From Octopus bimaculoides (lineage: Eukaryota), in contig NC_068981.1 in assembly GCF_001194135.2 (NCBI RefSeq), positions 188,756,700 to 188,820,699 of the forward strand: DNA of 64,000 nt. The letters run 5' to 3'. Positions 13,815 to 53,334 of this stretch are shown here, piece by piece (the stretch's first letter is position 1; each line of letters begins with the position of its first letter). The notes beneath the pieces are model-generated. The model was not told where the DNA came from. It saw only the letters and a program-made list of their open reading frames with translations, and ran no database searches. The position numbers were made by a program, and so were the translations under genes.

Positions 13815-16120
13815 TTATCAATATATCTCATATTTTTGTGTGGAAATGTAAATTTCATTGGCAGAGTTTCATCTCTTAAAAGAACCCTTAATTTAGAAGT
13901 TATTGAAAATGAATTATTTACATTTCCAATTTTATAATTTGTATTAAAGGTATGTCTTTCTTGGATCTTGTACTTTTTATACTTGATTTGGAATTTCTTA
14001 AAGATCTTCATGTTCTTTTACAAAAGACATAACTATATTCCTTGAGGCTAATCTCACTATTAGTATGGAGAAGAGAAGAACACTCCATTAGTTCAGTGGA
14101 TTACCAGTCATTTAGATGTGAAAGCAAGATAGTATATTAGGAAGTAAGCTTATTACAAAATACAATTAATTACAATTAATGACAAGACTCAAGAGTTGTT
14201 TTGTACAACTCCTCATCTTAAAATTATGTTCACTGATTTACATGAAGCAAACTTTTCCTCACTCAGTTTAAATACTCCATACTGGCTAACAAGGATAAAA
14301 ACTCTTGGACATAGTGTGCACTAAATATAAGCAATGGTCTTTAATCAGCCAATAGACTTTATATGAGTCTCAAAATTGCAGTCCTTTTTTCTGACATTGT
14401 AGGGAGTCATCTTTGCAGCAACTTTCAATGAATTGAAAACCTGGAAACTCAAAGGATTCATTTCTTTTATAAATTAATCCAAACAAATGCATTGATCATT
14501 GATCTTTCACAGTTTCCTCTGTATGAAGGTTTCAAAGGATGGGATCCTAGGAAACAAACTTTAATGGTGGAATCTAAATTTAAAGAAGAAATTGAAAAGA
14601 AATATCTAGTCTTGATAAACTATTAGCATGAGTTCAGGCCAAAGTTTGCAGACGTAATTCAGCCTTTTCTTGCAACAGAAATGGATTGTCTTCTTTTTAC
14701 AGAATGCTTCAACAACAGGCTGTTAAGAAGAGAGAAAGTTGTTTGAAGACAATAAATTTACTGTTTGTGAAACAACTTCCACTGTTGATCTTTCTGAATT
14801 CAAATAGCAGGAATAATGTGTAGAAATGAAAATCTGTTAGTCATATATTTGATAATGCACAGAGAAATTGAAGCAATATTGAACATGAAGCTAATGTGTT
14901 AGTCTATCTCAGTCAACATAGTCAAAGTATAAAAAGATAACAGGATAGCACCATTAGTAGGAGAGGTTAGGAAGGCAAAGGGGGAGGGTAAATCTATTGC
15001 AGAAAATTGAACCTCCTCATACTTCCTTGTACTCTACTAATTTTTATTGAATCTTATCTGTTTTATTTTAATCTAATTTATTTCTTTTCACTTCCTCTTT
15101 TACCTTCCAGACCATTCCTACTAACAACATTACCATGTTATCTCTTACTATACTGAACATGAAGCATATATGGTGACATGATCTATAGAAAGATTGGAAT
15201 ATTTTTCTGTTAGCAATATTTTTCACATTGGAGACTGATTATCTACCTTTACAATACTTTATTTTAAAGTGTCTTGACATGTCCAGATGAGCTTCACTAC
15301 AAACTGGCATGTGAGCCCTCACATTATCACAATATGATTTCAAAATCATTTACACGACTGGTAAATGTACCATTTATATAGATCTTCTTAGTAGACTAAA
15401 ATATGATTTGGATCAGTTTGATAGCGTTCTTCTTTTACATTCTAACATAGGTAATGGGGAATTAATTTTGTCAATACTTAGGCAGAAAAAGACATTAGAG
15501 ATCATTTTAGCACATGTACCCTTTATGTTCACTAAAAGACTTGGGAAATTTGGTCCAGATTAGTGTTTCTAGATTGATACTTTCCCAGACATTTATCTGA
15601 ACTGATTGTAGAGAATAATTTCATGTCTAATAAATGCAGGCTATTTAGTCCTGAACGTTATCAAACAAATGCTCTTCCAACAATTGTTAATACACACACG
15701 GACGTACAGCAATTACCAATGAAAGCAAGGGTTTGTGTTTGGTGTCCTGATCTTAAAAGAGCTACTGATGAATTTATCAGATCTTATGACATGTGTACCA
15801 AAAACAGATTGAGTATATGTTCAAAATGTTGGGAATATATTTGATCAAAGATGGCTGAACCACCTCTTGAACTAAAGTAGAAGCCTGGAAAATGCAAGGA
15901 ATTTTTTTTTTTTTATCTTTCATCTTATCTAGATTTGCTATTCCAGGACTCAGTGGTATCAGACAGTATACTAGAATTCATTGACTTATACAACTGGTTA
16001 AAGTGAGTTGCTAGCAAGAAAATTGAAAATCTTATCAATAGTCTAAAATCTAATGGTGCAGCTGGAAGAGCTGAGCAAACAACCAAGTCTGCATTAAAAG
16101 GTTACAGTCCAACAATTGGA
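13815..16120 (+). mobile_element. decayed Ty3/Gypsy LTR-retrotransposon pol (RT and integrase)
   Basis: Colinear remnants: QWITSHLDVK..YIR..YYKIQL (~14090), MFTDLHEANFSSLSLNTPYW (~14225-14285), LNPNKC (~14475), SKDGI (~14533), YLVLINY*HEFRPKFADVIQP (~14602), MKARVCVWCPDLKRATDEFIRSYDMC (15719), VVSD (15953), SNGAAGRAEQTTKSALK (16050). Confidence 0.8.
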
Positions 16121-16452
16121 AAATATGATGGCTGTTTTGTTATAGGCTCTTTTCAGTTTCCATAGTACATCTGGTGTATGCAAGTTATCTCTAGCTGAGA
16201 AATTACTTGGCAGACAGTTAAGAGCAACAGTAAACTTTATTTTGTTTCATATCATTGAACAAAAGGTTCTTTACAAGAACGATATGATGAAATTTCTTGC
16301 AGATGATGCCCAGTATCTGATCAATACTGACAGAAACACATCCAGGACTAAAAGGTGCAGTTAGTGTCAGTTGAACAAATAGCTACAAAAACTCCCTTCT
16401 CAGACACATCTGCCTATCATGATCTTGGTTTTTGGTTCAATAGGAAGTAGAA

Positions 16453-16686
16453 AGGCGGTGAGCTGGCAGAAACGTTAGCACGCCGGGTGAAATGCTTAGG
16501 GGTATTTCGTCTGCCGTTACGTTCTGAGTTCAAATTCCGCCAAGGTCGACTTTGTCTTTCATCCTTTCGGGGTCGATAAATTAAGTACCATTTACGCACT
16601 GGGGTTAATGTAATCGACTTAATCCCTTTGTCTGTCCTTGTTTGTCCCCTCTATGTTTAGCCCCTTGTGGGCAATAATGAAATAAG
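16453..16686 (+). mobile_element. SINE family B
   Basis: Full-length copy, near identical to 34779-35012. Confidence 0.9.
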
Positions 16687-17324
16687 GAAGTCGAAGTAGA
16701 AACTTTAATGAAGCAAATAAAAATGCTTATTTAAGATTATTAAAAATTATAAAGTTGAAACAAATAATGCTATCAATAGGTCACCAATGCCAACTTTTCT
16801 ATCTCCTATAAAGCCACTATTTAATTATATAATGCCTCATCATAATGTTTCTAACAATTATTATTACATTGTGATAATAACAGTCTACACTTACTACACA
16901 TTACTAATGACATTTTATTTTCTATTTCCACTACTCTAAATATTTAAAAACAACCTAGACAAATACATCTTGTTGCATTAATAATAATAGTAGTCTTGTT
17001 ACATAAATAATATACAGTTACAATAGTAGTGGCTATATTTTAGGTGAAATAGCATCTCCTGAGTGTTTGGAAATCAATCAGTATTTTCAGAGAGTACAAT
17101 GTCATATATTTATTATTCATGTAATATACACACACATGTATATTGTGTGTGGACGTGGGTGTATGTGCATACATACATACATTGCTTTTGTTGTTACATT
17201 GCATTGATGGAACTTTCCACTCTTGTTAGAAACTAACTCCTTCCTGGCAGAAAGAATTCAAATAATTTAAAATAGAACATATATACATACATATATTTGC
17301 ATATATACATATGTAAGAACATAT

Positions 17325-18337
17325 TTGTCAAGTTTCTGCAGAAGACATCATGCGTGGTTAGCAGCTATCAAAAACGTCATCAAGGTAATACCTCTCCATG
17401 TGACGTGATGTTGATACTAAAACAGTCTAAGATAGCATTCATAAAAGAGACTGTCCTGGAATACTTATAGAGAATGCTTGTTATTGAACACATACATATA
17501 TAAACATCAACACAAGGAATATTAGGAGAACATTCCCATCAAAACTTTTATCAAGTGTAAATAAAACAGGCCAGATGTTGTTTGGGACAAACAAAAATAA
17601 ATATAGAAATAAAACATTTCTAAATCTCTCAGAGAGATTTATGCAGTGGCAATACGATAAAGTAGCTGTATGCTGTCAACTTAATGTGACAGTCCCATGA
17701 AAGGGAATAATACTACTGTTGGTTAGACCTAGGAAGCTGCACCGCTTCCTGTTGGCCTTGACACATTTACTGTGTCCTTATGTTTACAAGGGGGAGACAA
17801 GCACCTCCACCCAGCTAAGCCTGCATCCAGAGTCTTTACTCATCATCAGAAACATGTCTCTGGATGCAGGCTTAGCTGGGTGGAGGTGCTTGTCTCCCCC
17901 TTGTAAACATAAGGACACAGGAAATGTGTCAAGGCCAACAGGAAGCGGTGCAGCTTCCTAGGTCTAACTAACAGTAGTATTATTCCCTTCAGGGGACTGT
18001 CACATTAAGTTGACAGCATACAACTACTTCAAAAATAAATATGTACCATCATAGAGGTCAGCTGCCCTGAAGATGTGAATATCTCTTTGAAAATCAAAGA
18101 GTAAGTGGATAGCTATGGAAAATTGCTTTGAAACCTCCAGCTCCGATATCCAGATTGTAAATTTACATTTATACCAATAAAAACTGGTGCACTTGGTTTT
18201 GAGAATAAATGTCTAAGAGACAATCTGGATAAACCAGGGGATTTTAAAAAAGGAAATCAACCAACTAATACACACATTATAAATACAACCTGTAAGTGAA
18301 ACAGTTAAAACATGTAAGACTTTTCTAAAGTTTAAAA
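17325..18337 (+). mobile_element. 3' relic of an R4/Dong-type (restriction-like endonuclease) non-LTR retrotransposon, split by the 17605-18029 insertion
   Basis: Translates as ..EDIM..QLSKTSSR*YLSM*RDV..IPIKTFIKCK*NRPDVVWDKQK*|ICTIIEVSCPEDVNISLKIKE*VDSYGKLL*NLQLRYPDCKFTFIPIKTGALG..TVKTCKTFLKF, the zinc-knuckle remnant plus PD..E..K RLE architecture. Confidence 0.8.
17605..18029. mobile_element. 425-bp foldback insertion with 13-bp TSD
   Basis: Arms 17660-17832 and 17858-18029 (3 mismatches, 1 G-T, 1 bulge), 25-nt loop; TSD caaaaataaatat at 17592-17604 and 18030-18042. Confidence 0.9.
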
Positions 18338-19253
18338 GGTGAGTTTACTTTGTTATTTACATTCTAACAATGGCAGTTTGTTTCTTTGTTAGACACCATT
18401 TTACTTCTTACAGGAAGGTTTCAAATAATTTGAAATAGAAGATAACATGCATACACACCTTCAATTAATCAATCAATCAATCAATCAGTCAATCAATTAT
18501 AGCCATGACAGATTCTGAGTTTATCCTTGAATTTTTATCTTTGTGAGTATAACATCACAGGATACAAGTTGAAAGTAATACCACATTTCTCTGAAAATCT
18601 TTTAATAAATTTCTTTTTATTTGACATAGTAAATGTTATTATCTAGCTCAATTTAAATTGCTGTTGTTATTTAGATAAATATAGAATTCCCCCAAACAAT
18701 TTGTTTCCAATTGACATGAAGCAAATTTCCATCATTATTATTGAAGGACATATTTTAGTTTATCAAAATGCTTCAGAAACCTGTATCTGTTGTTATTCAA
18801 TTGTGTCGCCCACGGATCCTTCATTAAAACAACTAATGTAAAAATTAAGGAATTACAGTTGATAGCATTTATATTATTTCAGTTATTTTCTGCCTTACAT
18901 TAAAAAAAAACAAAAAAAAACCAGTCATTTCTATCTGTGCATTCAATCTTGGATGCCATTCAACTGAAATACATATTTTCTCCATGTGACAAAACCAATG
19001 TTTAATTCATTTCTTCAGAATATAGTGCACTGGAGCAATTAAACTCTAGTGTGTAGCTAGTCATTACATTCAGTTCTCAGTGAAAAACTACAGTCACACT
19101 TGCTTTGAAATTTCTGTCAGTTTCAGCTAAAATCAATATTTAACCTAAAGATTGTTATCTATAAACGCAATGCTAATTTTTTAAATACAATTTCTATAAC
19201 TGCCTGTCTCTCACAATCTCGACCACCTCACCTTCTCCCCCACCCACCCTTAC

Positions 19254-19335
19254 CTGTTCTTTAGACAGCAAGATAAATTTTCATTCAAATAATCAAGTGT
19301 GTTTTCTTTCAGAAACTCATATGATGAAATGAAAA
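19254..19335 (-). CDS. candidate 82-nt internal exon, xFISSYEFLKENTLDYLNENLSCCLKNx, product unknown
   Basis: Strong donor AACAG|gtaagg; only one open frame; weaker acceptor (cccag, or taaag 5 nt upstream). Confidence 0.35.
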
Positions 19336-19441
19336 CTGGGCTTTACAGAATTTAATATTTGAAAGATAAACATACGAATGGTTGTTTCTTATAAATGAAT
19401 CTTTGTCACTTTATTTCTTGGGTCGACTACTAAACATTTAT

Positions 19442-19770
19442 AGGTGCAGGCATGGCTGTGTGGTTAAGAAGTTCACTTTGCAACCACATGGTTTCGGGTT
19501 CAGTTCCACGATGTGTCACTTCGGATAAGTGTCTTTTACTACAGCCCCACGCTGGCCAATGCCATGTGAATAAATTTGGTTGATGGAAACTGTGTGGAAT
19601 CCCATTGTGTGTGTGTGTGTTCTTGTTTGTCCCTCACATAACTTGACAGTCAGTGTTGGTGAGTTTACATCTTCATAGCTTAGCAATTCAGTAAAAGGGA
19701 CCGATAGAATAAGTACTAAAAGTAAATGATCAAAGCTGTGGCCTAATGACTGAGACAAGTAAAAGATAGA
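19442..19770 (+). mobile_element. SINE family C, diverged
   Basis: Head ggcatggctgtgtggttaag and colinear body. Confidence 0.8.
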
Positions 19771-20127
19771 TATTTCAGTTGTTCTAAATGCTTGCACAAT
19801 CACTTCTTATACAGCTTATCCACACACACATGCACATGATGTATAATGAGTCAGGAAAGATTTATTTTGTTGCTGTGGCATAGTTCAGTTGTGCTGTGGC
19901 AGATTCCAGCCAATCAGAGCTGGAGGCATATGAATAAAACGGCAGTGATCTGCCTTACCTAAAAACTCTTCTTTCAGTTTCCATCTACCAAATCCACTCA
20001 CAAGGTTTAGTCGACCCGAGGCTATAGTAGAAAACACTTACCCAAAGTGATACGCAGTGGGACTGAACCTGGAACCATGTGGTTGGTAAGCATATTGGTG
20101 ACTTGTATATGTACTCACTTGCCCTTG

Positions 20128-20180
<53 letters not shown>

Positions 20181-20329
20181 TATACATATACATATATATA
20201 TATACATATATATAGTCATTATGAGGATGTGTAAAACTCTTACGGGGATAGTTTCATCCAAGATACACTGGTTTAATATATAATATTTTGACGATATAAT
20301 TCTTCAATGAATATATTATATAAATATAA

Positions 20330-20551
20330 AATATTATTAAGTAAGAAAATAGAGAGATATAATGAATGTAAATTAATTTTTAATTAATTAACGTTGCCTA
20401 CAATTGCTTCAATTTACACTCAGTACAAATTACAAAATATATGTTTTGTAATTTGTATTGAGTGTAAACTGAAATGATTGTAGGCAATGTTAATTCATTA
20501 AAAATTGATTTATATCCATTGTATCTCTTCATTTTCTTACTTAATAATATT
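20330..20551. repeat. AT-rich imperfect palindrome (MITE-like)
   Basis: 108-bp arms, 6-nt loop, no indels, 13 non-Watson-Crick positions; TA-rich flanks. Confidence 0.85.
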
Positions 20552-21484
20552 ATATATATATATTGTGTGTGTGTGTGTGCGTGTGCGAGGCTTCTGCATA
20601 ATTTCCATTTATTAAATTAACCTGCATAACATTAGTCAGCTTGGGGCTGTGAAAGAAGACACTTAGCCATGATGCTGCATAGTGGGACTGAACCCAAAAG
20701 CACATGATTTCAAAGCAGACTTCTTAACCACACAGCTACGCCTATGCATTCACATCTAAAATTCTCTTTGGTCTTTATCATTTCCAGTTGTACCATAAAT
20801 ACATTACAACTTTTACAATTTCTAAACGTTATTTTCTATGGTGGTAATGATCAACCCCTCCATTATTTTAAAATGGCTTTATTTATTTAAACTGTATTTC
20901 ACTTCATATTCATAGGTGCAGGAATGAAATTTGCTTAGGGGACAGAAATCAGGGTCCAAAACATTTTACAAAGTTTCTACAGATGGATGCCCTTCCTAAT
21001 GCCAACCACTCCAAGAGTGTAGTGGGTGCTTTTACATGCCACCAGCATGGGGGCCGGTCAGGCAGCACTGGCATTGACCAATTAAAATAAATTTAGTAAT
21101 GGAAAACTAATGTTTCAAATCAGTCCAAAAAGATTTCTATGTTTGTTGTTCGTTATGGAGAAGAATATTTTCAGGAGAATGTTCAAAGCATTTTCATTGT
21201 CTGCTAAAAAATTTTGTGGGTGCACCCTTTGCAACCCCTGTTCCCTAGCATTCGTTCTTATTCTGTATTTTTTCTTTGTAAATTTTGTCTTACATCAAGA
21301 ACAAATACTTTTATTGTAACACATTGTAACATTCTCAGGAACTGTTATTATTGTTTTCAAATTTTGGTACAGGGCCAGCAGGTCCAGAGGATGGGTGGGG
21401 GTAGTCAATTACATTGATCCCAGTGTTCAACTGGTACTTATTTAATCAACCCCGAAAGGATGAATGGCAAAGTTGACCTTGGCA

Positions 21485-21787
21485 GAATATAGTTGCGTCT
21501 TTTGTAAAAGAACATGAAGATCTTTAAGAAATTCCAAATTAAGTATAAAAAGTACGAGATCCAAGAAAGACATACCTTTAATAGAAATTATAAAATTGGA
21601 AATGTAAATAACTCATTTTCAATAACTTCTAAATTAAGGGTTCTCTTAAGAGATGAAACTCTTCCAACGCAATTTATATTTCTGCACAAAAATAAGAGAT
21701 ATATTGATAACTAGCACTGTGTCGATTACAATGACAAGGGCTTTAGTTGATTTGCTCCACAGAACAGCCAGCTTGTGAGATTAACAT
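21485..21787 (-). repeat. 303-bp inverted duplicate of 13738-14040
   Basis: About 17 substitutions and no indels by manual alignment; flanked by a duplicated 68-bp SINE segment. Confidence 0.9.
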
Positions 21788-22032
21788 TCAGTGTTCGACT
21801 GGTACTTATTTGATCAACCCCGAAAATATGAACGGCAAAGTTGACCTTGGCAGAATTTGCAAGAAGTGTTTTTAATAATTATGATAACCTGGTTCTTTTT
21901 GAAGAACTGCCACAGGGGCTATAGAGAAAAATCTTTAAAGAATCTTTTGTCAAAAATCTAGGAAAGTCAACAGGGCCAAATTCAATGATCTTCGGGAAAA
22001 AAGAAAATCTTGCTCACTATATAAGAAGTGAG

Positions 22033-22282
22033 TGGAGGCGTGTGGCTTAGTGGTTAGGGTGTCAGCACCATGATCGTAAGATTGTGGTTTCGATTCCTGG
22101 ACCGGGCGACGCGTTGTGTTCTTGAGCAAAACACTTCATTTTACCTTGCTCCAGTCCACTCAGCTGGCAAAAATGAGTAAAGCTGTGATGGACTGGCGTC
22201 CTGTCCAGCTGGGGAACATATATGCCATAGAAACCGGGCCCATGAGCCTGGCTAGGCTTTAAAAGGGCGCATTTATTATTAT
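22033..22282 (+). mobile_element. SINE family D
   Basis: tRNA-like head, (TTA)n tail, ~15-bp TSD tatataagaagtgag/tatataggaagtgag. Confidence 0.85.
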
Positions 22283-22689
22283 TATATAGGAAGTGAGAAG
22301 GTGAGAACTCACAATATTGTGTAGCAAGAGAAAGTAGTTGATACACAGAAGATTCAGTGATTTGTGTTGAAATATTGATAAAGAACAATGACTTTAAATG
22401 TACTAAATTTAGTGGTGTGAATAGCAGCGAGAAAATTCACCAAATCATTTGACTTAACTGCACATTGTGTTCACTTGATGCTGAAAAGCATATAATTTCT
22501 GGAATCTAGGTGATATAATTTTTTTTTTTTTTTTTTGGCTGAATTCTAGTAGCAGCTGAAGTAGTAGTAGTAGTAGTAGTAGCAGCAGCGGCAGCTAAAA
22601 TAAGAGAGCATTGAAGAAGTTGAGGATTTGTTAGTGGATATATTTCTTCAAGCAAAAGGCAGATTGCTCAAAAGGCATGAGGAGTGGAA

Positions 22690-23095
22690 TATTGAGAGGG
22701 GAGAGACTTGGCAGGAGATATGGGGAGACTAGAGGGGAAAGAGTTGAATATGATCTGTTGGATGTGTAATGTCAACTTTCATGAAAGTGCAAGTGACCTG
22801 AAAGAGTGACTGGTACAGATTCAACTGGCATTAGTGAGTGTTGGCAGGAGAATTGACTACTATGCAGGTATGGGAATGTGACATAGAATGGATGTCACTT
22901 GTAAGGTGAAAAGGTACCTTGTAATGACATGGGGAGGTGTATGTCTGTCTTAAAAAAAAGGGTGAATGCGGAAGATTTGGGAAAAGGTAGTGAGGATAAT
23001 CACAAGATGGAAAGGCCTCGTAGATTATAGGAATCAGGACTGAAAGGAGAGATGACTTAAGACTGCTAAGTGAAGACTGCTGAGAAATTAAAGCC
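22690..23095 (+). mobile_element. decayed 3' end of an RTE-clade LINE ORF
   Basis: NMICWMCNV (cf. RMLRWMCNV) and YGNVT..MD (cf. WYGHVMRMD) remnants in a purine-rich stretch. Confidence 0.55.
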
Positions 23096-23515
23096 ATGTC
23101 AGCATGGTAAGATCAACATTAAAGCAATGATGATAATAATATCGAAATACAATAAATAAACAGATACAAAGTGTCCTGTTACCCAACAGAAACCATTTTG
23201 GTAACTTCAGATAATTTCAAAAGTATGCATAAAATACATAATTTGATCCAATTAAAAGGAAAAAAACATTGATGTAAACAAAAGTCAACATCCTACTAAT
23301 TTATTTTTAGTTTTGAAAAATGATATTTCTCTTTATTTTATGATTTTTAACACTTATTTTCATTTTTCTCTTTATATATATTGAAATGATCTTTTTTTAA
23401 TGCAATGAGCAGCTCCTATTCTTGTTCCACTTCTCACCTTTCCTTTTAATTTTGTTTCTTTATGATATTCACTTAACAGACATGAGGTTCTTTATGCCAC
23501 ATGTAGGTAACTCAC

Positions 23516-23577
23516 CAAGCAGAACAGAATCTATTTCGGTAAGACAAATTCTTAGTGATGCCACCATGATATGCATC
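23516..23577 (-). CDS. candidate 62-nt internal exon (DAYHGGITKNLSYRNRFCSAx or xMHIMVASLRICLTEIDSVLLx)
   Basis: atctttcacgtctgacag|...CTTG|gtgagt consensus sites; two frames open; not in a recognised repeat. Confidence 0.4.
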
Positions 23578-23939
23578 CTGTCAGACGTGAAAGATATCTG
23601 ACTATAAAACAAATAGTTAAGAAATCATGAACTACAATAAACTATGAAATACTACCAATTACATTGGCAGAACTACCACAGTCTGTTTGTGGATATATGG
23701 GGGAGGTGGGGGTAAATGGAAGATTCAATTTAGCCCTCATTAAATTAGCTTTTTGCTTTATAAAATGTAAATGTAGTTACAATGTAAAATAATAATAATA
23801 ATAATAATAACACTGCAATGTGACAATACAAAGTTTGATGTACAAGAAAGTTAAGTGACAAGGCCAGACTAAGTACATAGGAAGAGGTTAGATATAAATT
23901 TTTGTGGTATGTAATAGATCTGGTAGAGAAGGTGCAGAT

Positions 23940-24428
23940 GTATGTACGTATGTATGTGTATGCATGTGTGTGTATGTCTGTATGTGTGTGTGTATGCACG
24001 TGCATGTGTGTGTATGTAGGTATGTGTGTGTATGTAGGTATGTGTGTATGTGTCTATCTATCTGCGTGTGTGTGTCTCTTCTATATTTTAATTATTATGT
24101 ATGTGTGTATGTACATACTTATGTCTTTGTGTATGTATGTTGTGTATGTATGTATCTATCTGTGTGTGTGTATGTGTGTATGTATGTTTGTGTGCATGTA
24201 TGTGTGTATGTATCTTCTATATTTTAATTATGTATGTATGTGTGTATGTATGCATGTATGTATGTGTGTGTGTGTATGCATGTATCTATCTGTGTGCGTA
24301 TGCATGCGTATGTATGTGTGTGTGTGTATGTATCTATCTGTATGTCTCTTTTATATTTTAATTATGTATGTGTGTGCATGTATGTATGTATGTATGTGCA
24401 TGTGTGTATGTGTGTGTGTGCGTGTGTA
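23940..24428. repeat. compound (TG/TA)n microsatellite with ~135-bp higher-order periodicity
   Basis: Anchor ctatattttaattatgtatg recurs at 24081, 24217 and 24351. Confidence 0.85.
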
Positions 24429-25227
24429 GCACTCGAATGCATACATGTATTTAGCAGAGCAGTGCATAGAGTAATTTAGGTATTTAGGGCTTCTATCACA
24501 ATTCTTGTTCTACTTAGGCTGCTGCTGAAGAAATATGACAACCATTATATTCCTGATAAGCACCAGATGTGTAGAAACACAGGAGCTACAAAGTACTTCA
24601 AAGAACCGTCTTCAAATGTTATGCAAAAAAAAAAAAAATAAATAAACAAATAAAAAGTTTACAAAAAGGGTTGAAGAAAAGTGAATTATCATTTAGCCCC
24701 ATGCAAAACCTGATAAAACAGCCAGAAGTGAAAGGTATTACAGCAATGGCCACCAGTCCTTTCGATTGCCCTTCCTTTATTAAAAGACAACAGGGTTTAA
24801 TATGAAATAAATTTAGCTGGTGTTTCTAGTAGTCTCTGTTAACTTGTGAGTTGAGGAAGTCATTGAAAATAAGCATTGACCCCTGCTTTTACAGCAGAAG
24901 TATCTATATTGGTTTGGAAGGCAAAATATAATTAATTGTGACAGGAGCAGTATTAATGCCAAAAGGTAGTATCTGTCTCCCATTTGAAGTGGATGTTGTC
25001 TAAGAACACAGAATACTGAGATATTTACCATGAGAGAACCTCTCATATGGACTTGTGGTGCATATGTGCACTCATGTTTATATTGCTAGGGGGAGATAAT
25101 TTTCTACTGCTGCAACTGGAATTACCAGATCATGTGACTTTTGGCCTTTCTTAGCATTGTCAATGGTAGATGTCTGTGGCTAGACATAGCAGCAATTTCT
25201 CTATCAGTGATATATATATATAAAATC

Positions 25228-25392
25228 CAGGAGTGGACAAGGGGTGTGTGTGGCTGAGGGGGCATGCCCCCCCTCCCTTCGAAGACAAGAAGTGTACCCT
25301 TCTAAAAAATGTTATTATGTCCTTTTCTACTGAAATTGTATTCCCTTCTAACCTTGTGCCCTCCCTTTGAAAAATTCCTGGGACCATGCCTG
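25228..25392. mobile_element. short GC-rich TIR element (MITE-like)
   Basis: caggagtggac ... gaccatgcctg imperfect TIRs; TSD unclear (aaatc/gaatc). Confidence 0.45.
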
Positions 25393-25922
25393 GAATCCCA
25401 AGGTCTATTCAGGCACTACTGTTGCAAATGACCATTAGGTTTATTAAGGAACAATAGCAACAGAATTAATAATAGTTACAGAAGGTAATCTTGAACTTCA
25501 ACTTAATGTAGAGGTTGTGTTAGAACACAGAATACGGCATTATCTACCACGAGAGAACCACCTCTCATATGGACTTGTGGTGAATAAAAAGAATGACTCT
25601 GAATTGATAAGGAAAGGTTCCTATGATAATGCCAAACGAAGGGAGCATTAGCAGGTAATGCCAAGTCTGAAAACATTCTGTTGCATTTGTGTGATAAAAC
25701 ATGATTGAAAGAGAATTAGTTTGTAAATTGTAAATTTCCTTAATTGGTATCCGGGATAAATGACAATTAGTATTTGGTGGTGAGCAGGTTGAATTGTTAA
25801 AGAGCTGGAGAAAATGTTTTGTTGCACTTCTACAGACTTTTTACATTCTGAGTTCAAATTTGCCTTTAAATCCACTTGAGTGTGATTTGATAGAATACGG
25901 TGCCAGTCTAGCGGGGGTCAGG

Positions 25923-26165
25923 TGGAGGCATGTGGATTAGTGGTAAGGGTGCTGGATTCATGACATTAAGATTGTGGTTTCGATTCCTGAACTGGGTGAT
26001 GCATTGTATCCTTGAGCAAAATACTTCATTTCACATTGCTCCAGTACACTCAGCTGGCAAAAAGGAGTTATCCTGTGAGGGACTGGTGTCCTGTCCTGGT
26101 GGGAAATATATACGCCACTGAAACCAGGAAACCAGCCCTCATGAGCCTGGCATGGCTTGAGAAGG
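25923..26165 (+). mobile_element. SINE family D, diverged
   Basis: Colinear with 22033-22282. Confidence 0.75.
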
Positions 26166-26742
26166 AAACAAGTCAGGGGTCAGTTAAGCTTAATGGTAAA
26201 ACACTCAGCTGGAATCTAGTGGAGTCATTGATATGAACTACTTCTCCTTGCCCTCAAAACTGTTGACCTTGTGCTGAAATCAGAAATAATTTTAATTAAC
26301 ATCATTATTATTATTCCTTTCTACTATAGGCACAAGGTTTGAAATTTTGGAGCAGGGGCTAGTCAATTACATCAATCCCAGTGCTCAGCTGGTACTTATT
26401 TGATCGACCCCAAAAGTATGAAGGGCAAAGTCAACCTTGGCAAAATTTGAACTCAGAATGTAAAGACAGACAAAATGCTGTTGAGCATTTTATCCAGCAT
26501 GCTCATGACTCTGCCTTTATTACTAAACTTTACAATTGGTTGGTATTGTATGATAGCTACAGTAATACATATACTCATTGAACCAATATTATAGTTTTTT
26601 CTCAAAGTTGGTATCACTTGACAGGTAAATCTAATTGGGAATTGTAATTTAGTGACAGAAAATAACAGTTCTATATTTCAGAGATGAGGAATTATTTACA
26701 TTATTTACAATTGACGGATATTTGTCCTCATTTTGTTTGTTG

Positions 26743-26787
26743 TTAACATGTTTCAGCTGATATACCCTCCAGCCTTCATCAGGTGTC
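26743..26787 (-). ncRNA. degenerate hammerhead ribozyme copy
   Basis: CUGAUGA-A-GGCUG..CAGCU-GAAACAUGUU; the 3' strand of stem I is disrupted. Confidence 0.45.
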
Positions 26788-26857
26788 TTGGGGAAATTTC
26801 GAACCTGGGTTCTCATTCCTAAGGTATTTTTCAATATTATTATTATTATTATTATTT

Positions 26858-26931
26858 AGGTCACTGCCTCGAATCGAACTTAGAATCTTGGGGTTAGTAG
26901 CCTGCGCTCTTAACCACTATGCCATATGCCC
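26858..26931 (-). other. tRNA-derived Pol III head (SINE-type, not a functional tRNA)
   Basis: GGGCATATGGCATAGTGGTTAAGAGCGCAGGCTACTAACCCCAAGATTCTAAGTTCGATTC: A box TGGCATAGTGG, B box GTTCGATTC; acceptor stem does not close; followed by (AAT)n. Confidence 0.75.
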
Positions 26932-27026
26932 TTTCAATTCCAGACAGTGATCTGAATAATGATGATAATAATAATAACTTCGAAAAATACCTGAGGAATG
27001 AGAACCCAGGTTTGAAATTTCCCCAA

Positions 27027-27073
27027 GACACCTGATGAAGGCTGGAGGGTATAATCAGCCGAAACGTTGTGTT
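27027..27073 (+). ncRNA. minimal type-I hammerhead ribozyme (PLE-type)
   Basis: GACAC-CUGAUGA-A-GGCUG(11 nt)CAGCC-GAAA-CG-UU-GUGUU: stem I 5 bp, stem II 5 bp, palindromic ACGU stem III. Confidence 0.7.
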
Positions 27074-27409
27074 AACAACAAACAAGATGAGGACAAATAT
27101 CTGTCAAATGTAAATAATGTAAAAAATAACAAAATAAGGAACAGTCATAGAAAATTTAGAAAGTAATTATTGTCAGAGTTAGTCCAAAACAAATCCGAAA
27201 TAAGGCATTTCCTCTCTTTTCTTTTCTTCGGTATCTTCATATAACATGTATAATAAATCATATGATAGCTTCTCCTCTATAGTAAGACAAATATCTCTGT
27301 CCTATCATACTATCATACTCTAATCTCTTGCCTGGCACACAGCCACTTCATCCTTGGTTCCACTTCTTCTCTCAACTAAGAGGTCTTTGTCTTGCAAGTT
27401 ACTAGGCAA

Positions 27410-27635
27410 CCTGCTGGTGCAGTACTACACACAAAGCACTTGTGCTGATGCCATGTAAAAGGCACTCTGTATATTCTGTAAAATGGTTGGTGTTAGGAAG
27501 GGCATCCAGCCATAGAAACCCTGCCAAAACAGACAACTGGAATCTGATGCAGCTCTCTAGCTTACCAGCTCCTGTCAAACTGTCCAACCCATGCCAGCAT
27601 GGAAGACAGATATTAAATGATGATGATGATAATGA
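27410..27635 (+). mobile_element. SINE family A
   Basis: Core and (GAT)n tail. Confidence 0.8.
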
Positions 27636-29165
27636 TGTGAATTTGTTTGTCAAAATATTAGTTAATGATTTAGCATTTTCTAAAATATTTCTCCAAAGTA
27701 ATATTGAGACAGATTGCTGCATACCATCAGAACCATACCTGCTTACTTACTTACCAAGTGCAATACCACAGATGGAGAATTTGCCTTGCATTTTCTCTGC
27801 ATCAGTAAAATAAATATCAGTGATATATTAATCAAGTATGTCAAATAAGTACACCAACCTTTCTTATGCATTCGGCTGTTGTCTCCTAATGATACTCAAG
27901 AAAATATTCACTGTATATCATACATTTTTAACACATATCTTTGTCTAGATATAACATGAAGGTTTGTTTTCCATCTTGCATATTTTCCATCTATTTTTAT
28001 AAAGAAAGTGTATACAGTTTCAATTACTTATTATTATCAACATTGTCACCTTGCCAAAGACTAAGTCTTTAGATACACTGGTACCACATTCTTGGTAATG
28101 TCTTAATTCAAAACAGACTTTGCTTTAGCTTCAGGTAAACCGTGTAGACTGAAATCACAGTTTATTTTCTATTAGAATTTAGAGAGATATTGTGAATAAA
28201 AGCTGTCAGTCATTTCAGTCAACCAATAAATGTTCAATGGAATAGATGCATTTATATTAGCCAGAGTTACCTCCCAGTCCTTGTAACAATAATCAATTAC
28301 ACTGCCTTTTTATTCTCTTTTCCCTTGATAAATAATAAAAGTTTTCAACTTGATCAGTTTCATTGTTACAACAAATATTTTCACATCTTTCAAAACTTTA
28401 CAACTATACATTGAAAGCAATTCACAATGTAAAACTAGATACCAAGCAACTTCAACAAATAAAAAAAAAAAATACACATACACACAAAATAAATAAATAA
28501 AAGAAGTTTAATTATTTCCAAATCTTAGTCTGAAAGATATATGATTTATTGATATTTTCAAAGATGTTTTATCATGGCTATTGGATGCTCTTGTTGTTAC
28601 GCTTCATGACGATGAATGCTTTTTCCAATTATATTTCAATTAGGCCCAAAGTGCCCTTGGGATAGCCAACTACACTTTACACATCCTGTAGAAGTTAATG
28701 CTTACCATTTATATTAACAATGTTGAATGTTTAGATTTGATTGCTAGAATATACAATGATTATAAATCCTGTAGGCTTTTGTGATTAAGTAGTCCACTTG
28801 GTGGGTTTGCAGTTGTGAGTTTGAATCCCACTACATAACACATTGGGAAACTGGTTTTTTTTTTTATTATAGATTTATGCCTTTGGAATGAAACTTGGTT
28901 GGCAGATCATCATCATCATATTTATTCTTCCATGCTTTCATGGGTCAGATTAGAGTATATTGAGGCAGGATTTCTATGGCTGGATGCCCTTTCTCTCACC
29001 AACCTCTTCTCATTTCCAAATGGGGTAATAATCTCTTAGTCTATTGAACAACAAACTGCCCAGACATGCTTTTGTGGTGGACTGCTGGTTAACAACACTC
29101 TTAGGAAGCCAGTGTTTACAAACCGGCATGCCAGAGAGAAATATGCAGTTATACACATATATATA

Positions 29166-33054: not shown

Positions 33055-33470
33055 TGTGGCTGTATGTGGTAAGAAGTTTTGCTTCCTAACCACATGGTTC
33101 TGGGTTCAGTCCCACTGCATGGCACTTTGGGTGAGTGTCTTCAACTAAAGCCTCAGGCTGACCAAAACCTTGTGAGTGGATTTGGTAAACAGAAACTGAA
33201 AGAAACCTGTCATGTGCATATGTTTGTGTGTGTATGTATGTATGTATGTATATATATGTGTGTGTGTGTGTGTTTGTCCCCCACTACCACTTGACAACTA
33301 GTGTTAGTACATTTATGTTCACTAACTTAGTAGTTTGGCAAAAGAGATTAATAGAATAAGTACCAGATTTTTTTTTTAAATGTGCTGAGGTTGATGCATT
33401 TGACTAAATATTCTTCAAGGCAGTGCCCCAGCATGGCCACAGTTAAATAACTGAAACAAGTAACAGATAA
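33055..33470 (+). mobile_element. SINE family C
   Basis: Colinear with 13032-13448. Confidence 0.85.
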
Positions 33471-35274: not shown

Positions 35275-35670
35275 TTATTTTTCTTCTACTTGCTTCAGTC
35301 ATTAGACTGTGGCCATGCTGGGGCAGCACCTTGAAGAATTTTTAGTCAAATGAATTGATACCAGTACCTTTTTGTTTCTTTGTTTAAGCCTGGTACTTAT
35401 TCTATCAGTCTCTTTTGCTTGACCACTAAGTTACAGGGACATAAACACACCAACACCAGTTGTCAAGTGGTGGTGGTGGTGGTGGATACAATGAAACACA
35501 CACACACACATATATATATGATGAGCTTCTTTCAGTTTCTGTCTACTATATCTACTCACAAGGTTTTTCTCTGCCTGAGATAATATCAGAAGAGATGTGA
35601 CCAAGGTGCCATGCAGTGGGACTGAACCTGAAACTATGGGGTTGAGAAGCAGCCTTTTTACCATGCAGCC
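35275..35670 (-). mobile_element. SINE family C
   Basis: Reverse complement of the 33055 type. Confidence 0.85.
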
Positions 35671-39423: not shown

Positions 39424-40495
39424 CATCATTGTTGTTCTTGTTAAGGTGACAAGTTGGCAGAATTGTTAGCAAGCCAGTCAAAGTGCTTAGCAGCTTTTCA
39501 TTTGTCTTTATTTTCTGAGTTCAAATTCTGCCAAGGTTGATTTTATCTTTCAACCTTTCAGGGCCAGTAAAATAAATCCCAGTTGAGCACTGGGGGTCAA
39601 TATAATCAACTTATTCCCTCCCCAAAATTGTTGGCCTTGTGCCAAAATTTGAAACCATTATTAATTATTGTTGTTATTATTATTAATAAGGTGAAGAAAG
39701 GTGGTGGAGCTAGCAGAATTGTTAGTATGCCGGACAAAATGGTTCGTGGCATTTCGTTTGTCCTTACGTTCTGAGTTCAATTTCTGCTGAGATCAACTTT
39801 GCCTTTCATCCTTTCGGGGTCGATGAAATAAGTACCAGTTATGCACTGGGGTTAATTAGCCCTCACCCCTGAACTTTCTGGCCTTGTGCCTAGTGTAGAA
39901 AAGATGATTAAGAAGGTGGTGAGCTGACAGAGTTGTTAGCATTGCTAGACAAGCTTACTAACATTTCTTGCAACTCTTCATGTTCTGAGTTCAAATGTCA
40001 TTCTGCTCAACTTTGCCTTTCGTTTTTTTTCAAGGTTGATGAACTAAAGTACCAGTTAAGTACTGGGGCCGATGTAATCAACTCACTTGCTCCTTCTAAA
40101 ATAGCTAGCCTTGTCCTGTTCCTATCAAAACTTTGCTCTGTTTGACAACTAGAATTAAATGAGGCTGATGTCAGTGCTGTCTGACTGGCTCCTGTGCTAG
40201 TGGCATGCAATAAGCACCTTTCATGCGTAGGTCATTGCCAGTGCTGCCTGTCTGGTTTCCCGTGCTAGTGGTAGGTAAAAAGCACCATCCGAACGTAGCC
40301 GATGCCAGTGCTGCCTGTCTGGCTCCTGTGCCAGTAACATGTTCTGACTTCAAATTCCGCCGAGGTCACCTTTGTCCTGTGTCCTTTCAGGGGTCAATAA
40401 ATGAAGTACCAGTGAAACACAGGGGTTGACGTGATCGACTAGTCCTCCTCCCCCAATGTTTCAGGCCTTGTGCCTTTAGTAGAAAGGATTATTAT
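38905..40495 (+). mobile_element. cluster of about five family B SINE copies separated by (ATT)n, plus family A modules
   Basis: ttctgagttcaaat..ttgcctttcatcctttcggggtcgataa..aagtaccag recurs near 38920, 39515, 39770, 39985 and 40345. Confidence 0.8.
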
Positions 40496-40504
40496 TATTA
40501 TTAC

Positions 40505-40775
40505 TCATCATCATCATCATCATCGTCGTCGTTTAATGTCCACTTTCCATGCTGCCATGGGTTGGACAGTTTGATTGAGGGCTGGCAAGCCAGAAGGCTG
40601 CACCAGGCTCCAATCTGATCTGGCAGAGTTTCTACAGCGGGATGCCCTTCCTGATGCCAACCACTCTGAGAGTGTAGTAGGTGCTTTTTATGTGCCACCA
40701 GTACGAGGGCCAGTCAGGCAGTACTGGCATCAATCACACTTGAATGGTGCTTTTTACATGCCACTAGCACAGGAT
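40505..40775 (-). mobile_element. SINE family A with upstream modules
   Basis: (CAT)n tail and reverse-complement core. Confidence 0.85.
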
Positions 40776-42417
40776 AATAATAATAATATCATTTTTAATT
40801 TTAATATCATTATTACCGTTTGTCAGAATTGGTAAAACTCAAACCAAAACATTTTGCAATGTTTAGTGTTTTTAAAGAGAAAACTGCAAAGAGTAGAACA
40901 GTGTTCATTTTACCCTATCATAAAAAAAGGCTCATAGCCAGAAAGAAGAGTGATGCGGTGTGGTATTCTGTTGATGCTTGCTTTAATTTGTTGATATGTG
41001 AGATAGAATGGGAATACTTTGACTGTTAATGGTACAGCATTTGTCCTTCTGCTTCTGCATTCTTAACAACTCCAAATTACCAATTATTTTAGATTGCTTT
41101 TGAGAAATGCTGTGGTCTCTTGATATTTCAATCACAATTCTGAAACAGATATTTCTTTATTAACTGCCATCATGTTGAGTTATTTACTTCAGTACTATCC
41201 AATAAGGTAACATCTACATTATTTCTCAACCTGCTAGAAATAACAGTCAAATTTTCCTCAAATAACACCATGTATCTCATCTATAACACCAAACTTGTTT
41301 CTGTTCCCCTTTCATACATTAACCTCTCAACACCTAGAATGAATCTGCCTCGCATACATGACTGTTTTAAAAGTAGAATGGCACATTGGATACTTTTGTC
41401 TTAAATATACAAACCATGGGTATGTCACACCTGGAAAGCCCCGTCACCAACGACATTGTTCAACCAAGGTTGACTAGAGGCTAAACAGAAACATGATCTA
41501 ATTGTATACTTCATTCCTTTAATATTTCTCTTATGCATAACATTTTGAAAAACATGATATCCATATTTTTGTCACAGAATCCAACGAAGTGTAAGCATGA
41601 TATTTTTATGGGAAAGTATATGTAATGATTCTGGTAAGCAGTTTGATGCCAATGTCCTTTGAGTCACATTTTCAGTCTTCTTAATTTGAACCTCACAGAT
41701 AAGATACTTTTTTTGATTAAGCTTTTGACTGGGGTAGCTACAAGAAGACTCTCTGTTTCTTTGCTCAATCAATACCAAGATTTATCTATCTTTATCTCAC
41801 TTGTCTCTTTCAAATAGGCACATTTCCTTTCATCTCTAATTGTTCTCTTCCTAATTATGCTTTATATTTTTACCTTGTTTATAATATTATTCCTGTTGAG
41901 GCTGACATTGGTTGCTACACACCTCAATTATAGGTTTTTCACTAATTGCATGATAAAAATCTATATTTCACCTTCAGTTCATTCTACGCATTGTTCAAAC
42001 TTTATTAAACTCCAGATTATTTGTCCATTTAAAACTTGTCGTATTGAATCGCACAGAAAGGCCTCCATATATTGCCATAATAGAATCGTTGACCTAATAA
42101 CATGTCTATTCTGTACTCATCAAATTAATGACTACTGCAGTGTATTGCATAACTGTCTCGCATTTAATTGATTAAATAAGGTTATGGGCATTGGCTGTTG
42201 CTCTGAACAATAGCTTTCACCATAAGTGTGTGTGTGTGTGTGTATGAATGCACGTGTGTCTGTGTATGTATATGCATGAATGTGTTTAATCCCATTGTGT
42301 GATATCTTGGGTATGTGTCTTCTATTATGGCTTCATGTTGATTGGTACCTTGTGACTGACATTTGGTTGATAGAAACTGCAGAAACCTATGTTATATATA
42401 TATATGTATATATATAT

Positions 42418-44424: not shown

Positions 44425-44680
44425 TCATAAGGAGGAGGGGGCTGTGTTGAGTCCGAAGGGGAAAGATGATCTAAGGTTAAAAATATAGCACTGTTCCAAG
44501 TGGAGTCGTGAGGGAGTGGACCCATGGTGCAGGGCGAGGCCAAAAATGGAGATGTTAGAGGGGGAGTGGTTGGCCAAGTGGNNNNNNNNNNGAGGCCAAA
44601 AATGGAGATGTTAGAGGGGGAGTGGTTGGCCAAGTGGAAGTGACGGGCGACGGGGGAGTCCGAACCTAACCGAACGTACA
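44425..44680 (-). mobile_element. Penelope-like element, C-terminal GIY-YIG endonuclease fragment
   Basis: After collapsing the 46-bp overlap around the 10-N gap the frame reads VRLGSDSPVARHFHLANHSPSNISIFGLALHHGSTPSRLHLEQCYIFNLRSSFPFGLNTAPSSL*, matching PVARHF..NHS..D..I.GL...R..LEQ..IF.L....P.GLN. Confidence 0.8.
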
Positions 44681-45152
44681 CTAGCTGTTGGACCCAGAGT
44701 TGCTCGTGTTTTCCATGTGTTGAAGTTAAGCCCACCACTGACCTTGTATTGAAATCACCTACGTTCCCCCGTGCCAACTATTACCCATTAAGTTGTTATA
44801 TTTGGTCCGGTAGGCTGTTGCAGAATGAGTAGATGCGTAGCAGGTGGAGGAAACGTGGTCAGAGCAGGCGACAGAGTTTTGTTGACAGAGTTTTGTTGAC
44901 GGAGCGGTGTTTTTGCAGTCGCCACTGCTGTGTTCAATGGTGCAGGCATAAACTGACATCAACTCACTGCCATGAACCTCGTTCACTCATCGATTGTCAT
45001 CAAAATTGGGCAAAAAATACAAAAGCTGCAGAAAAAATAACATCGTTATGGGAATTTCCATTCAAACGCCCGATTGAGTTCACAAAAATTGATGCCAACT
45101 GAGCATTAACGAGCTTTCGAAAAGTTCCAACCTTATTTGAACTTTAGGACAT

Positions 45153-53161: not shown

Positions 53162-53334
53162 TATAAAATATTTACGTAGCTGACTGGTTTCACTTGTGCT
53201 GGTTGTAATTAAGAAATTAATGATAATGTTACAATTTCATACTATCATAAGAAGTTTTCATTCCATGTTAGTAGGAAAAAGGATGTGTGTCTCTATCTGT
53301 ATTTATGTTTATACCTGACTAAAATCCTGTTGTG

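What the first reader, a model, noticed from the sequence alone, without database searches (positions are those of the whole stretch)
17605..18029. 425-bp insertion that is almost entirely a 173-bp-stem hairpin, with a 13-bp TSD
Seen: arms 17660-17832 and 17858-18029 differ at only 5 positions around a 25-nt loop. One arm has a 55-bp unpaired extension (17605-17659) containing its own palindrome aaatctctc-a-gagagattt. The whole unit is flanked by caaaaataaatat, and removing it restores the interrupted LINE frame WDKQK*ICTIIEVSCP. Each arm also has internal stems (aggaagc/gcttcct, gacaca/tgtgtc). Established: a 13-bp TSD and an asymmetric terminus are atypical of TA/TTAA/8-bp cut-and-paste MITEs, whereas inverted terminal copies with a one-sided extension are described for Penelope-like insertions. 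Inference: a young, non-coding, PLE-mobilised foldback element with the same architecture and A-rich target (AAAATAA) as 26666-27123. If transcribed it is an ideal ADAR or Dicer substrate.
Basis: partly seen in the sequence, partly recalled or inferred. Interest (0 to 1): 0.75.

Follow-up and report, generated by a model that had tools for sequence, protein, structure and literature searches.

The report
Hairpin-shaped retroelement insertion in octopus-like DNA
A 425-base piece of foreign, non-coding DNA sits inside a dead retrotransposon gene and is folded into a near-perfect hairpin; its layout matches how Penelope-like retroelements insert, so it is probably an ordinary by-product of that process, but I could not show which enzyme made it.

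Summary
The arms 17660-17832 and 17858-18029 differ by 4 substitutions and 1 indel. They enclose a 25-nt loop, a 55-nt extension lies on the left only, and an exact 13-bp direct repeat flanks the unit. An uninterrupted relative of the host retrotransposon ORF (P0001/L001) lines up with the two flanks and covers the 13-mer region only once. This shows a real insertion with a real target-site duplication. The host is the C-terminal domain of an RVT_1 plus zf-RVT retrotransposon family that is also found in Octopus.

A cut-and-paste MITE is rejected: there are no inverted repeats at the true termini, and the two duplications differ in length (13 and 9 bp). The layout matches published Penelope-like element (PLE) insertions: head-to-head inverted copies, a tail at one end only, and a short duplication. 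The unrelated element at 26668-27122 has the same layout, the same polarity and the same AAAATAA target core. I therefore think the hairpin was built during integration and was not mobilised as a foldback.

Nothing ties the sequence to a PLE: no coding similarity, no hammerhead ribozyme, and no other copy in any collection I could reach. A LINE reverse transcriptase that jumps templates remains a live rival.

The parts
17592..17604 (.). Left copy of the 13-bp target-site duplication, CAAAAATAAATAT
   Evidence: Exact direct repeat. The related empty site L001/P0001 covers this region only once.
17605..17659 (.). One-sided 55-nt extension ('tail') that has no partner in the right arm. It holds two small stems, 17605-17621 and 17622-17640.
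   Evidence: 31% G+C.
17660..17832 (.). Left arm (173 nt). Under the head-to-head model it is a copy of the unit read on the minus strand, with its 3' end to the left.
   Evidence: 47% G+C. The orientation is an inference.
17833..17857 (.). Unique 25-nt centre (loop), not self-complementary
17858..18029 (.). Right arm (172 nt), an inverted copy that lacks the 25-nt centre and the 55-nt tail
18030..18042 (.). Right copy of the 13-bp target-site duplication
17369..17604 (+). Host, left part: decayed C-terminal coding remnant of an RT-bearing (LINE-type) retrotransposon
   Evidence: 76% DNA identity to L001 131-367. Full-length relatives carry RVT_1 and zf-RVT upstream of this domain.
18043..18335 (+). 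Host, right part: continuation of the same remnant
   Evidence: The blastn hit spans window 18031-18335 (it starts inside the right duplication copy), 79% DNA identity to L001 356-659. The peptide is colinear with P0001.
26659..26667 (.). Sister element: left copy of the 9-bp duplication AAAATAACA
26668..27122 (.). Sister insertion with the same layout: tail 26668-26690, arm 26691-26878, unique centre 26879-26932, arm 26933 to about 27122. Arms are 88.7% alike. The sequence is unrelated to the main element.
27123..27131 (.). Sister element: right copy of the 9-bp duplication AAAATAACA

Best explanation
This is a dead-on-arrival retro-insertion, and its hairpin shape was produced by the integration reaction itself.

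Proposed sequence of events: a staggered cut was made at an A-rich site (AAAATAA core) in an old LINE remnant. A non-coding RNA segment of about 250 nt was reverse-transcribed at the cut. A second, shorter copy of the same segment was then laid down in the opposite orientation, so that the two 5'-truncated ends meet in the middle and the two 3' ends face outward. One outer end keeps a 55-nt terminal 'tail' that the other lacks. Filling in the staggered cut gave the 13-bp duplication.

This is the published signature of insertions by Penelope-like elements (reverse transcriptase plus GIY-YIG endonuclease). I take a PLE acting on its own 3'-terminal region, or on a short non-autonomous partner, as the most likely machinery.

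Shown: the insertion, the duplication, the architecture, and a second unrelated element with the same architecture, polarity and target core. Inferred: the RNA intermediate, hairpin formation at integration, and the PLE enzyme. No function is implied. If the locus is transcribed, the RNA would form a 173-bp duplex.
For: - Insertion and duplication are shown by an uninterrupted relative of the host.
- The insert is foreign in composition: 44.5% against 31% G+C.
- The true termini are not inverted repeats (7 of 30 and 12 of 30 matches), and the duplication lengths differ (13 and 9 bp). This fits staggered nicking and reverse transcription, not a DDE transposase.
- The layout matches the PLE literature. 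[quoted passage not shown] Inverted pLTRs (pseudo-LTRs) with 8-10 bp duplications, a 31-bp tail at the 3' end of one inverted pLTR, and self-priming suggested as the cause (PMC3846280).
- De novo PLE insertions are very short because of 5' truncation, median 128 bp (PMC9977147).
- PLEs are listed among recently active families in Octopus vulgaris (PMC13282606), and the host LINE family has members in Octopus.
- The sister element at 26668-27122 is unrelated in sequence but shares layout, polarity and the AAAATAA core. Only 0.2-0.4% of random 9-mers in this window contain that core.
- Apart from low-complexity microsatellite pairs and a weak 70% pair at 45486-45706, only three of the 25 longest inverted-repeat pairs listed for the 64-kb window have arms within about 100 nt of each other. 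The many ordinary SINE copies seen do not show this shape.
Against: - No sequence link to any PLE. ORFs and a six-frame query found no homologues. There is no hammerhead ribozyme, although Naiad-type PLEs lack one as well.
- The target is a unique A-rich site, not the microsatellites that PLEs are reported to prefer.
- The tail is 55 nt here and 23 nt in the sister, against the published 30-40 nt.
- No second copy of the unit was found: not in the window, in 20 kb of O. vulgaris, or in the metagenome, viral or prokaryote collections. So neither the linear unit nor its autonomous partner has been seen.
- There is no pairing at the loop-arm junctions of the kind a simple snap-back primer would need (read from the sequence).
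- The assembly could not be checked against reads.
Confidence: 0.55

Rival explanations
1. The same kind of retro-insertion, but made by a LINE (non-LTR) reverse transcriptase. After copying a SINE-like or 3'-UTR RNA at the nick, the enzyme jumped onto its own new cDNA, or self-primed, and copied it back. The result is an inverted partial duplicate.
For: - The duplication lengths (13 and 9 bp) and the A-run at the start of each duplication fit target-primed reverse transcription by an endonuclease that prefers A/T-rich sites.
- LINE ORF2p shows hairpin priming, DNA-templated synthesis and template jumping in vitro (PMC10830420).
- LINEs (Dong-R4, CR1, RTE, L1-Tx1) are the most abundant recently active elements in Octopus vulgaris.
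- The tail carries two small stem-loops, the kind of 3' structure that some LINE enzymes are known to recognise (the comparison is from general knowledge).
Against: [quoted passage not shown]
- The many ordinary SINE copies seen in the window do not show this shape.
- There is no poly(A) or simple-repeat tail at either outer end.
- There is no match to any LINE 3' end in the window.
Confidence: 0.22
2. One reading: a family of non-coding foldback elements in which the whole 425-bp hairpin is the unit that is transcribed and copied, by a PLE or otherwise.
For: - The unit is compact and bounded by a clean duplication.
- The arms are still 97% alike.
- A third close-spaced palindrome lies at 20318-20563, so hairpin-shaped repeats are not rare here.
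Against: - An RNA with a 173-bp perfect duplex is a poor template and would be exposed to dsRNA-processing enzymes (general knowledge).
- Two unrelated sequences have the same layout. A shared process explains this more simply than two independent foldback families.
- No second copy was found anywhere.
Confidence: 0.1
3. A cut-and-paste DNA transposon derivative with long inverted repeats (MITE, Foldback or Mutator-like).
For: Long inverted repeats and a flanking duplication are what such elements look like at first sight.
Against: - The ends set by the duplication are not inverted repeats: 7 of 30 matches for the main element, 12 of 30 for the sister.
- One end carries 55 nt with no partner.
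- A 13-bp duplication fits no DDE superfamily I know of, and the sister has 9 bp.
Confidence: 0.03
4. The insertion is real but the inverted arm is not original: either an assembly artefact, or a later fold-back duplication caused by replication template switching.
For: - The assembly is a gapped draft with seven runs of N.
- It has an unresolved 45-bp overlap duplicated across the 10-N gap at 44582-44591.
- No reads could be examined.
Against: - The arms differ at 5 positions and enclose a unique 25-nt centre. A collapsed or chimeric palindrome would not show this.
- The right arm abuts the duplicated target exactly.
- A later duplication would have had to land exactly at the element-flank junction, and to do so twice, given the sister.
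Confidence: 0.07

Closest known systems
Penelope-like element (PLE) insertions with inverted pseudo-LTRs and a one-sided 'tail' (Arkhipova 2006; Arkhipova et al. 2013, PMC3846280; Craig et al. 2021, PMC8557442)
   Same: Head-to-head inverted copies with the truncated ends in the middle; an extension at the outer end of only one copy; a short target-site duplication; strong 5' truncation that gives very short inserts; occurrence in an invertebrate genome that has recently active PLEs.
   Different: No reverse transcriptase or GIY-YIG coding sequence, and no detectable similarity to a PLE. No hammerhead ribozyme. The target is a unique A-rich site, not a microsatellite. The tail is 55 nt (23 nt in the sister) against 30-40 nt. 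The duplication is 13 bp against the 8-10 bp reported in Adineta vaga.
Non-autonomous PLE partners (for example Chlamys-N4 and MRC1 in Chlamydomonas; PMC8557442, PMC9977147)
   Same: Short non-coding units presumed to be copied in trans by a PLE enzyme; very short 5'-truncated insertions.
   Different: Those were recognised by 3'-end similarity to an autonomous PLE and by head-to-tail pseudo-LTRs. Neither could be examined here.
LINE-mediated insertions with rearranged 5' parts (L1 twin priming; template jumping by non-LTR reverse transcriptases, PMC10830420)
   Same: A variable-length duplication at an A-rich target, and an inverted 5' segment produced during integration.
   Different: From general knowledge, twin priming inverts a different part of the template and does not duplicate the same part. 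No poly(A) is present here. The one-sided tail is reported as not seen in non-LTR insertions (PMC8557442).
Foldback/MITE DNA transposons and hairpin-RNA (hpRNA) or miRNA loci
   Same: A long near-perfect inverted repeat that would give a long RNA duplex if transcribed.
   Different: No terminal inverted repeats at the true ends, and an asymmetric tail. The Rfam miRNA hits over the hairpin are far below threshold (42 bits against 90). No small-RNA evidence.

Membership tests
Penelope-like element insertion | Encodes, or shares its 3' end with an element that encodes, a PLE-clade reverse transcriptase and a GIY-YIG endonuclease | not testable with these tools
   The insert has no ORF with homologues. 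No eukaryotic genome search was available to find a partner. No match in the window.
Penelope-like element insertion | Inverted 5'-truncated copy adjacent head-to-head (inverted pseudo-LTR arrangement) | tested here: met
   Arms 17660-17832 and 17858-18029 around a unique 25-nt centre. Description in PMC8557442 and PMC3846280. The orientation of the copies is inferred.
Penelope-like element insertion | [quoted passage not shown] | tested here: met
   55-nt unpaired extension at 17605-17659, on the left only; 23 nt in the sister. The lengths fall outside the quoted range.
Penelope-like element insertion | Short target-site duplication | tested here: met
   13 bp, shown by the uninterrupted relative L001/P0001. 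The sister has 9 bp.
Penelope-like element insertion | Hammerhead ribozyme motif in the pseudo-LTR (canonical clades; absent from Naiad and Chlamys) | tested here: not met
   No hammerhead family at E <= 1 in 16000-28500, or at E <= 10 in 17605-17857.
Penelope-like element insertion | Insertion bias for microsatellites | tested here: not met
   The target is AAACAAAAATAAATATGTACC, inside a coding remnant. The bias is described in PMC8557442. It is a tendency, not a requirement.
Cut-and-paste TIR transposon / MITE | Terminal inverted repeats at the ends that abut the duplication | tested here: not met
   7 of 30 matches (main) and 12 of 30 (sister) between the left end and the reverse complement of the right end.
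Cut-and-paste TIR transposon / MITE | Duplication of a length fixed by the superfamily | tested here: not met
   13 bp and 9 bp for two insertions with the same layout. From general knowledge, 13 bp fits no DDE superfamily.
SINE | Head derived from tRNA, 7SL or 5S RNA, with an internal Pol III promoter | tested here: not met
   Main unit: no such Rfam family at E <= 10 and no tRNA by ARAGORN. Sister centre: an A-box/B-box-like pair at 26871-26918 (0.24 expected by chance per window), but no tRNA by Rfam or ARAGORN, so the sister is inconclusive.
SINE | 3' end shared with a partner LINE | not testable with these tools
   No LINE 3' end in the window matches. The genome was not searchable.
miRNA / hairpin-RNA gene | Match to a curated family, or small RNAs mapped to the arms | tested here: not met
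   mir-2300 42 bits (threshold 90) and mir-127 29 bits (threshold 60). These are generic hairpin matches.

The most novel reading that the evidence does not exclude
Octopus genomes carry short non-coding elements that are copied by Penelope-like enzymes. Each insertion creates a ready-made long inverted repeat, so every new copy is a fresh source of long double-stranded RNA (an ADAR or siRNA substrate) wherever it lands in a transcribed region. This would link PLE activity to the supply of editing or silencing substrates in cephalopods.
Probability: 0.15. Interest if true: 0.6.

Novelty: new member of a known kind. Interest (0 to 1): 0.32.

Why it matters
As it stands, this is a clean, datable example of a retro-insertion that arrives already folded into a long hairpin. 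It is about 3 million years old by the O. vulgaris repeat clock, with wide error. It also comes with an unusually good proof of the empty site.

It is useful to annotators because repeat-finding software tends to call such objects MITEs or foldback transposons. The asymmetric tail and the non-repeated termini show this one is neither.

It would matter more if a genome-wide survey showed many such insertions in transcribed regions of a cephalopod genome. Long perfect duplexes are what RNA-editing and small-RNA pathways act on. It would also matter more if the unit proved to be a non-autonomous partner of an animal PLE, because the only such partners named in the papers read here are from green algae.

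Tried and rejected
There is no check of the assembly, copy number, empty alleles, transcription, editing or small RNAs. I did not try to get round this with another tool.
- Other copies in the window: blastn at word size 11 and 7 found none. A 37-nt hit at 52229 is noise.
- Other copies in public collections: exact patterns from the arm found nothing in metagenome contigs (two scans) or viral contigs. The only hits in prokaryote genomes were two chance 20-mers.
- Protein route to other copies: the 80-aa ORF across the loop and a 945-aa concatenation of all open frames of both hairpins found no homologues.
- Extra octopus DNA: 20 kb of O. vulgaris around P0010 (L004) has only microsatellite matches and is not the orthologous locus.
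- Known RNA families: only sub-threshold miRNA-type hits caused by the hairpin itself. No tRNA, 5S, 7SL or hammerhead.
- tRNA-like head in the sister's centre: suggested by an A-box/B-box pair but not confirmed by ARAGORN, even at relaxed thresholds, or by Rfam.
- Classifying the host by Pfam or PDB directly: only sub-threshold hits to PD-(D/E)XK nucleases and zf-RVT, and no PDB relative. It was settled indirectly through full-length relatives that carry RVT_1.
- Snap-back priming: I looked for pairing between the loop ends and found none (read from the sequence).
- A GIY-YIG-like peptide at about 44470-44650 (minus strand) was suspected from memory to be a PLE remnant. Pfam gave nothing, so it is not used as evidence.

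Full report
**What is there.** The window is AT-rich (33.5% G+C) draft eukaryotic sequence with seven runs of N. At 17605-18029 lies a 425-bp block.
- Its two arms, 17660-17832 and 17858-18029, are reverse complements that differ by four substitutions and one 1-nt indel.
- The arms are separated by a unique 25-nt centre at 17833-17857.
- To the left of the left arm are 55 nt (17605-17659) with no counterpart on the right. They contain two small stems, AGAAAT/ATTTCT and AAATCTCTC/GAGAGATTT.
- The block is bounded by an exact 13-bp direct repeat, CAAAAATAAATAT (17592-17604 and 18030-18042).
- As RNA, the 451-nt stretch 17592-18042 (block plus both 13-mers) folds at -348 kcal/mol, 40 standard deviations below shuffled controls.
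- The block is 44.5% G+C in flanks of 31%.

**Proof that it is an insertion.** Joining the flanks and keeping one copy of the 13-mer gives the reading frame ...NRPDVVWDKQK*ICTIIEVSCPEDVNISLKIKE....
- A protein search with that peptide found P0001, a 176-aa ORF on a 673-bp ENA metagenome contig. It aligns without a gap at the join (67% identity, E = 1e-44).
- At the DNA level, L001 131-367 matches window 17369-17604 and L001 356-659 matches 18031-18335. The 12 nt of L001 that are used twice correspond to the duplicated target.

So the 425 bp were inserted and about 13 bp of target were duplicated.

**The host.**
- A search with P0001 against 1.84 billion representative proteins gave 1910 relatives. 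The domain always sits at the C-terminus of longer proteins.
- Five long ones all carry RVT_1 reverse transcriptase, and two of them also zf-RVT.
- Relatives include proteins named from Octopus vulgaris and O. bimaculoides.

Weak sub-threshold Pfam hits to PD-(D/E)XK nucleases over the RPD...D segment fit a restriction-like endonuclease LINE such as Dong-R4, which is abundant in O. vulgaris (PMC13282606). I did not establish that.

**What it is not.**
- It is not a cut-and-paste inverted-repeat transposon. The ends that abut the duplication are not inverted repeats (7 of 30 matches), one end has 55 unpaired nt, and from general knowledge a 13-bp duplication fits no DDE superfamily.
- It is not a curated RNA gene. 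The only Rfam hits over it are miRNA families at less than half their thresholds, which any long hairpin attracts. No tRNA, 5S, 7SL or hammerhead model matches the single unit.
- It has no detectable coding capacity.

**The sister element.** I re-measured it:
- duplication AAAATAACA at 26659-26667 and 27123-27131;
- unpaired tail at 26668-26690;
- arms at 26691-26878 and 26933 to about 27122, 88.7% alike;
- unique 54-nt centre.

Its sequence is unrelated to the main element. The order of parts and the polarity are identical: duplication, tail, arm, centre, arm, duplication, with the tail on the left. Both duplications contain AAAATAA, which only 0.2-0.4% of random 9-mers in this window contain. 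Its termini are not inverted repeats either (12 of 30). Its centre holds an A-box/B-box-like pair, which hints at a SINE head, but ARAGORN and Rfam do not call a tRNA there. I leave that open.

Two unrelated sequences with the same asymmetric layout and the same target core point to a shared integration process, not to two independent foldback families.

**Comparison with the literature.**
- Craig et al. [quoted passage not shown] - Arkhipova et al. [quoted passage not shown] They report non-PLE sequences captured between such repeats and propose self-priming as the cause (PMC3846280).
- De novo PLE insertions in Chlamydomonas mutation-accumulation lines have a median length of 128 bp because of 5' truncation, and non-autonomous partners exist (PMC9977147; PMC8557442).
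- In O. vulgaris, 31 PLE families are listed among recently active elements (PMC13282606).

**Where the PLE reading is weak.**
- Nothing in the sequence itself ties it to a PLE. There is no coding similarity and no hammerhead ribozyme, although Naiad-type PLEs lack one too.
- The target is not a microsatellite.
- The tail lengths (55 and 23 nt) fall outside the quoted range.
- No second copy of the unit could be found: not in the window, in 20 kb of O. vulgaris, or in the metagenome, viral and prokaryote collections.

So I have seen neither the linear parent nor an autonomous partner. LINE reverse transcriptases can prime from hairpins, copy DNA and jump templates (PMC10830420), and LINEs are the most active elements in octopus. 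A LINE-made inverted duplicate therefore remains a serious rival.

**Mechanism I commit to (confidence 0.55).** A staggered cut was made at an AAAATAA-containing site. An RNA segment of about 250 nt was reverse-transcribed at the cut. A second, shorter copy was made in the opposite orientation by template switching or self-priming, so that the truncated ends meet at 17833-17857 and the 3' ends face outward, with the terminal 55 nt kept on one side only. Fill-in gave the 13-bp duplication.
- Shown: the insertion, the duplication and the architecture.
- Inferred: the RNA intermediate, the timing of hairpin formation and the enzyme.

I found no pairing at the loop-arm junctions that a simple snap-back would need. 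A jump without homology, or the joining of two cDNAs, is therefore more likely than classical self-priming.

**Age.** The arms differ by 4 substitutions in 172 aligned positions. Half the Jukes-Cantor distance is 0.012. With the calibration used for octopus repeats (distance 0.09 for 25 My; PMC13282606), this is about 3 My, with a Poisson range of roughly 1-8 My. The sister is about 12 My old. 'Young' is fair for the main element.

**Assembly caveat.** The scaffold is a gapped draft, and a 45-bp overlap is duplicated across the 10-N gap at 44582-44591. Three things argue against an artefact: the five differences between the arms, the unique centre, and the exact abutment of the right arm on the duplicated target.

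**Function.** None is indicated. The insert sits in a dead retrotransposon. If the region is transcribed, the RNA would contain a 173-bp near-perfect duplex, a plausible substrate for ADAR or Dicer. That remains untested speculation.

**Verdict.** This is a real and well-bounded hairpin insertion of a known kind, probably PLE-type. The enzyme is unproven and the family has not been sampled. It is of modest interest, mainly as a clean example and as a caution against annotating such objects as MITEs.

Noticed in passing
window 20318-20563: A third close-spaced palindrome: 123-nt arms, 87% complementary, no spacer, very AT-rich, next to (TA)n/(TG)n microsatellites. Its sequence is unrelated to the other two hairpins. 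The boundaries and any target-site duplication cannot be read because the flanks are low-complexity. It attracts sub-threshold mir-5014 and MIR395 hits.
   Followed up: partly
window 44537-44636 (10-N gap at 44582-44591): The same 45 bp (read on the minus strand: CACTTGGCCAACCACTCCCCCTCTAACATCTCCATTTTTGGCCTC) stands on both sides of a 10-N gap. This is an unresolved contig overlap, so an assembly artefact, and a measure of the quality of this draft.
   Followed up: partly
window about 44470-44780, minus strand: The peptide ...PVARHFHLANHSPSNISIFGLALHHGSTPSRLHLEQCYIFNLRSSFPFGLN... reminded me of GIY-YIG endonuclease domains of Penelope-like elements. Pfam found nothing even at E <= 10, so this is an unverified lead. 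If true, a PLE remnant lies 26 kb from the hairpin.
   Followed up: partly
window 26871-26918, minus strand: A Pol III A-box/B-box-like pair (AGTGG...GTTCGATTC; the full A box TGGCATAGTGG is seen by eye) lies in the unique centre of the sister hairpin. This suggests a tRNA-derived SINE head, but it is not recognised by ARAGORN or by the Rfam tRNA model.
   Followed up: yes
window 19450-20100, 33080-33300, 35430-35660, 40200-40780, 53300-53730, 62340-62660, 63150-63490: There are many copies, in both orientations, of at least two abundant short repeat families, recognisable by recurring pseudo-peptides such as ...SGFG(K/R)(Q/W)KLKE... and ...FLQ(P/L)DA(L/F)PNANH.... They account for most of the long-range inverted-repeat pairs. 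One family matches O. vulgaris DNA at 86-87% identity (L004 19889-20315).
   Followed up: no
L001 (ENA ERZ23578778, NODE_163444) and many other ENA 'metagenome' contigs: Most close relatives of the host LINE domain sit on short ENA or Logan metagenome contigs. The only ones that carry a name are from Octopus. These assemblies probably hold host (cephalopod) DNA and not microbial genes.
   Followed up: no
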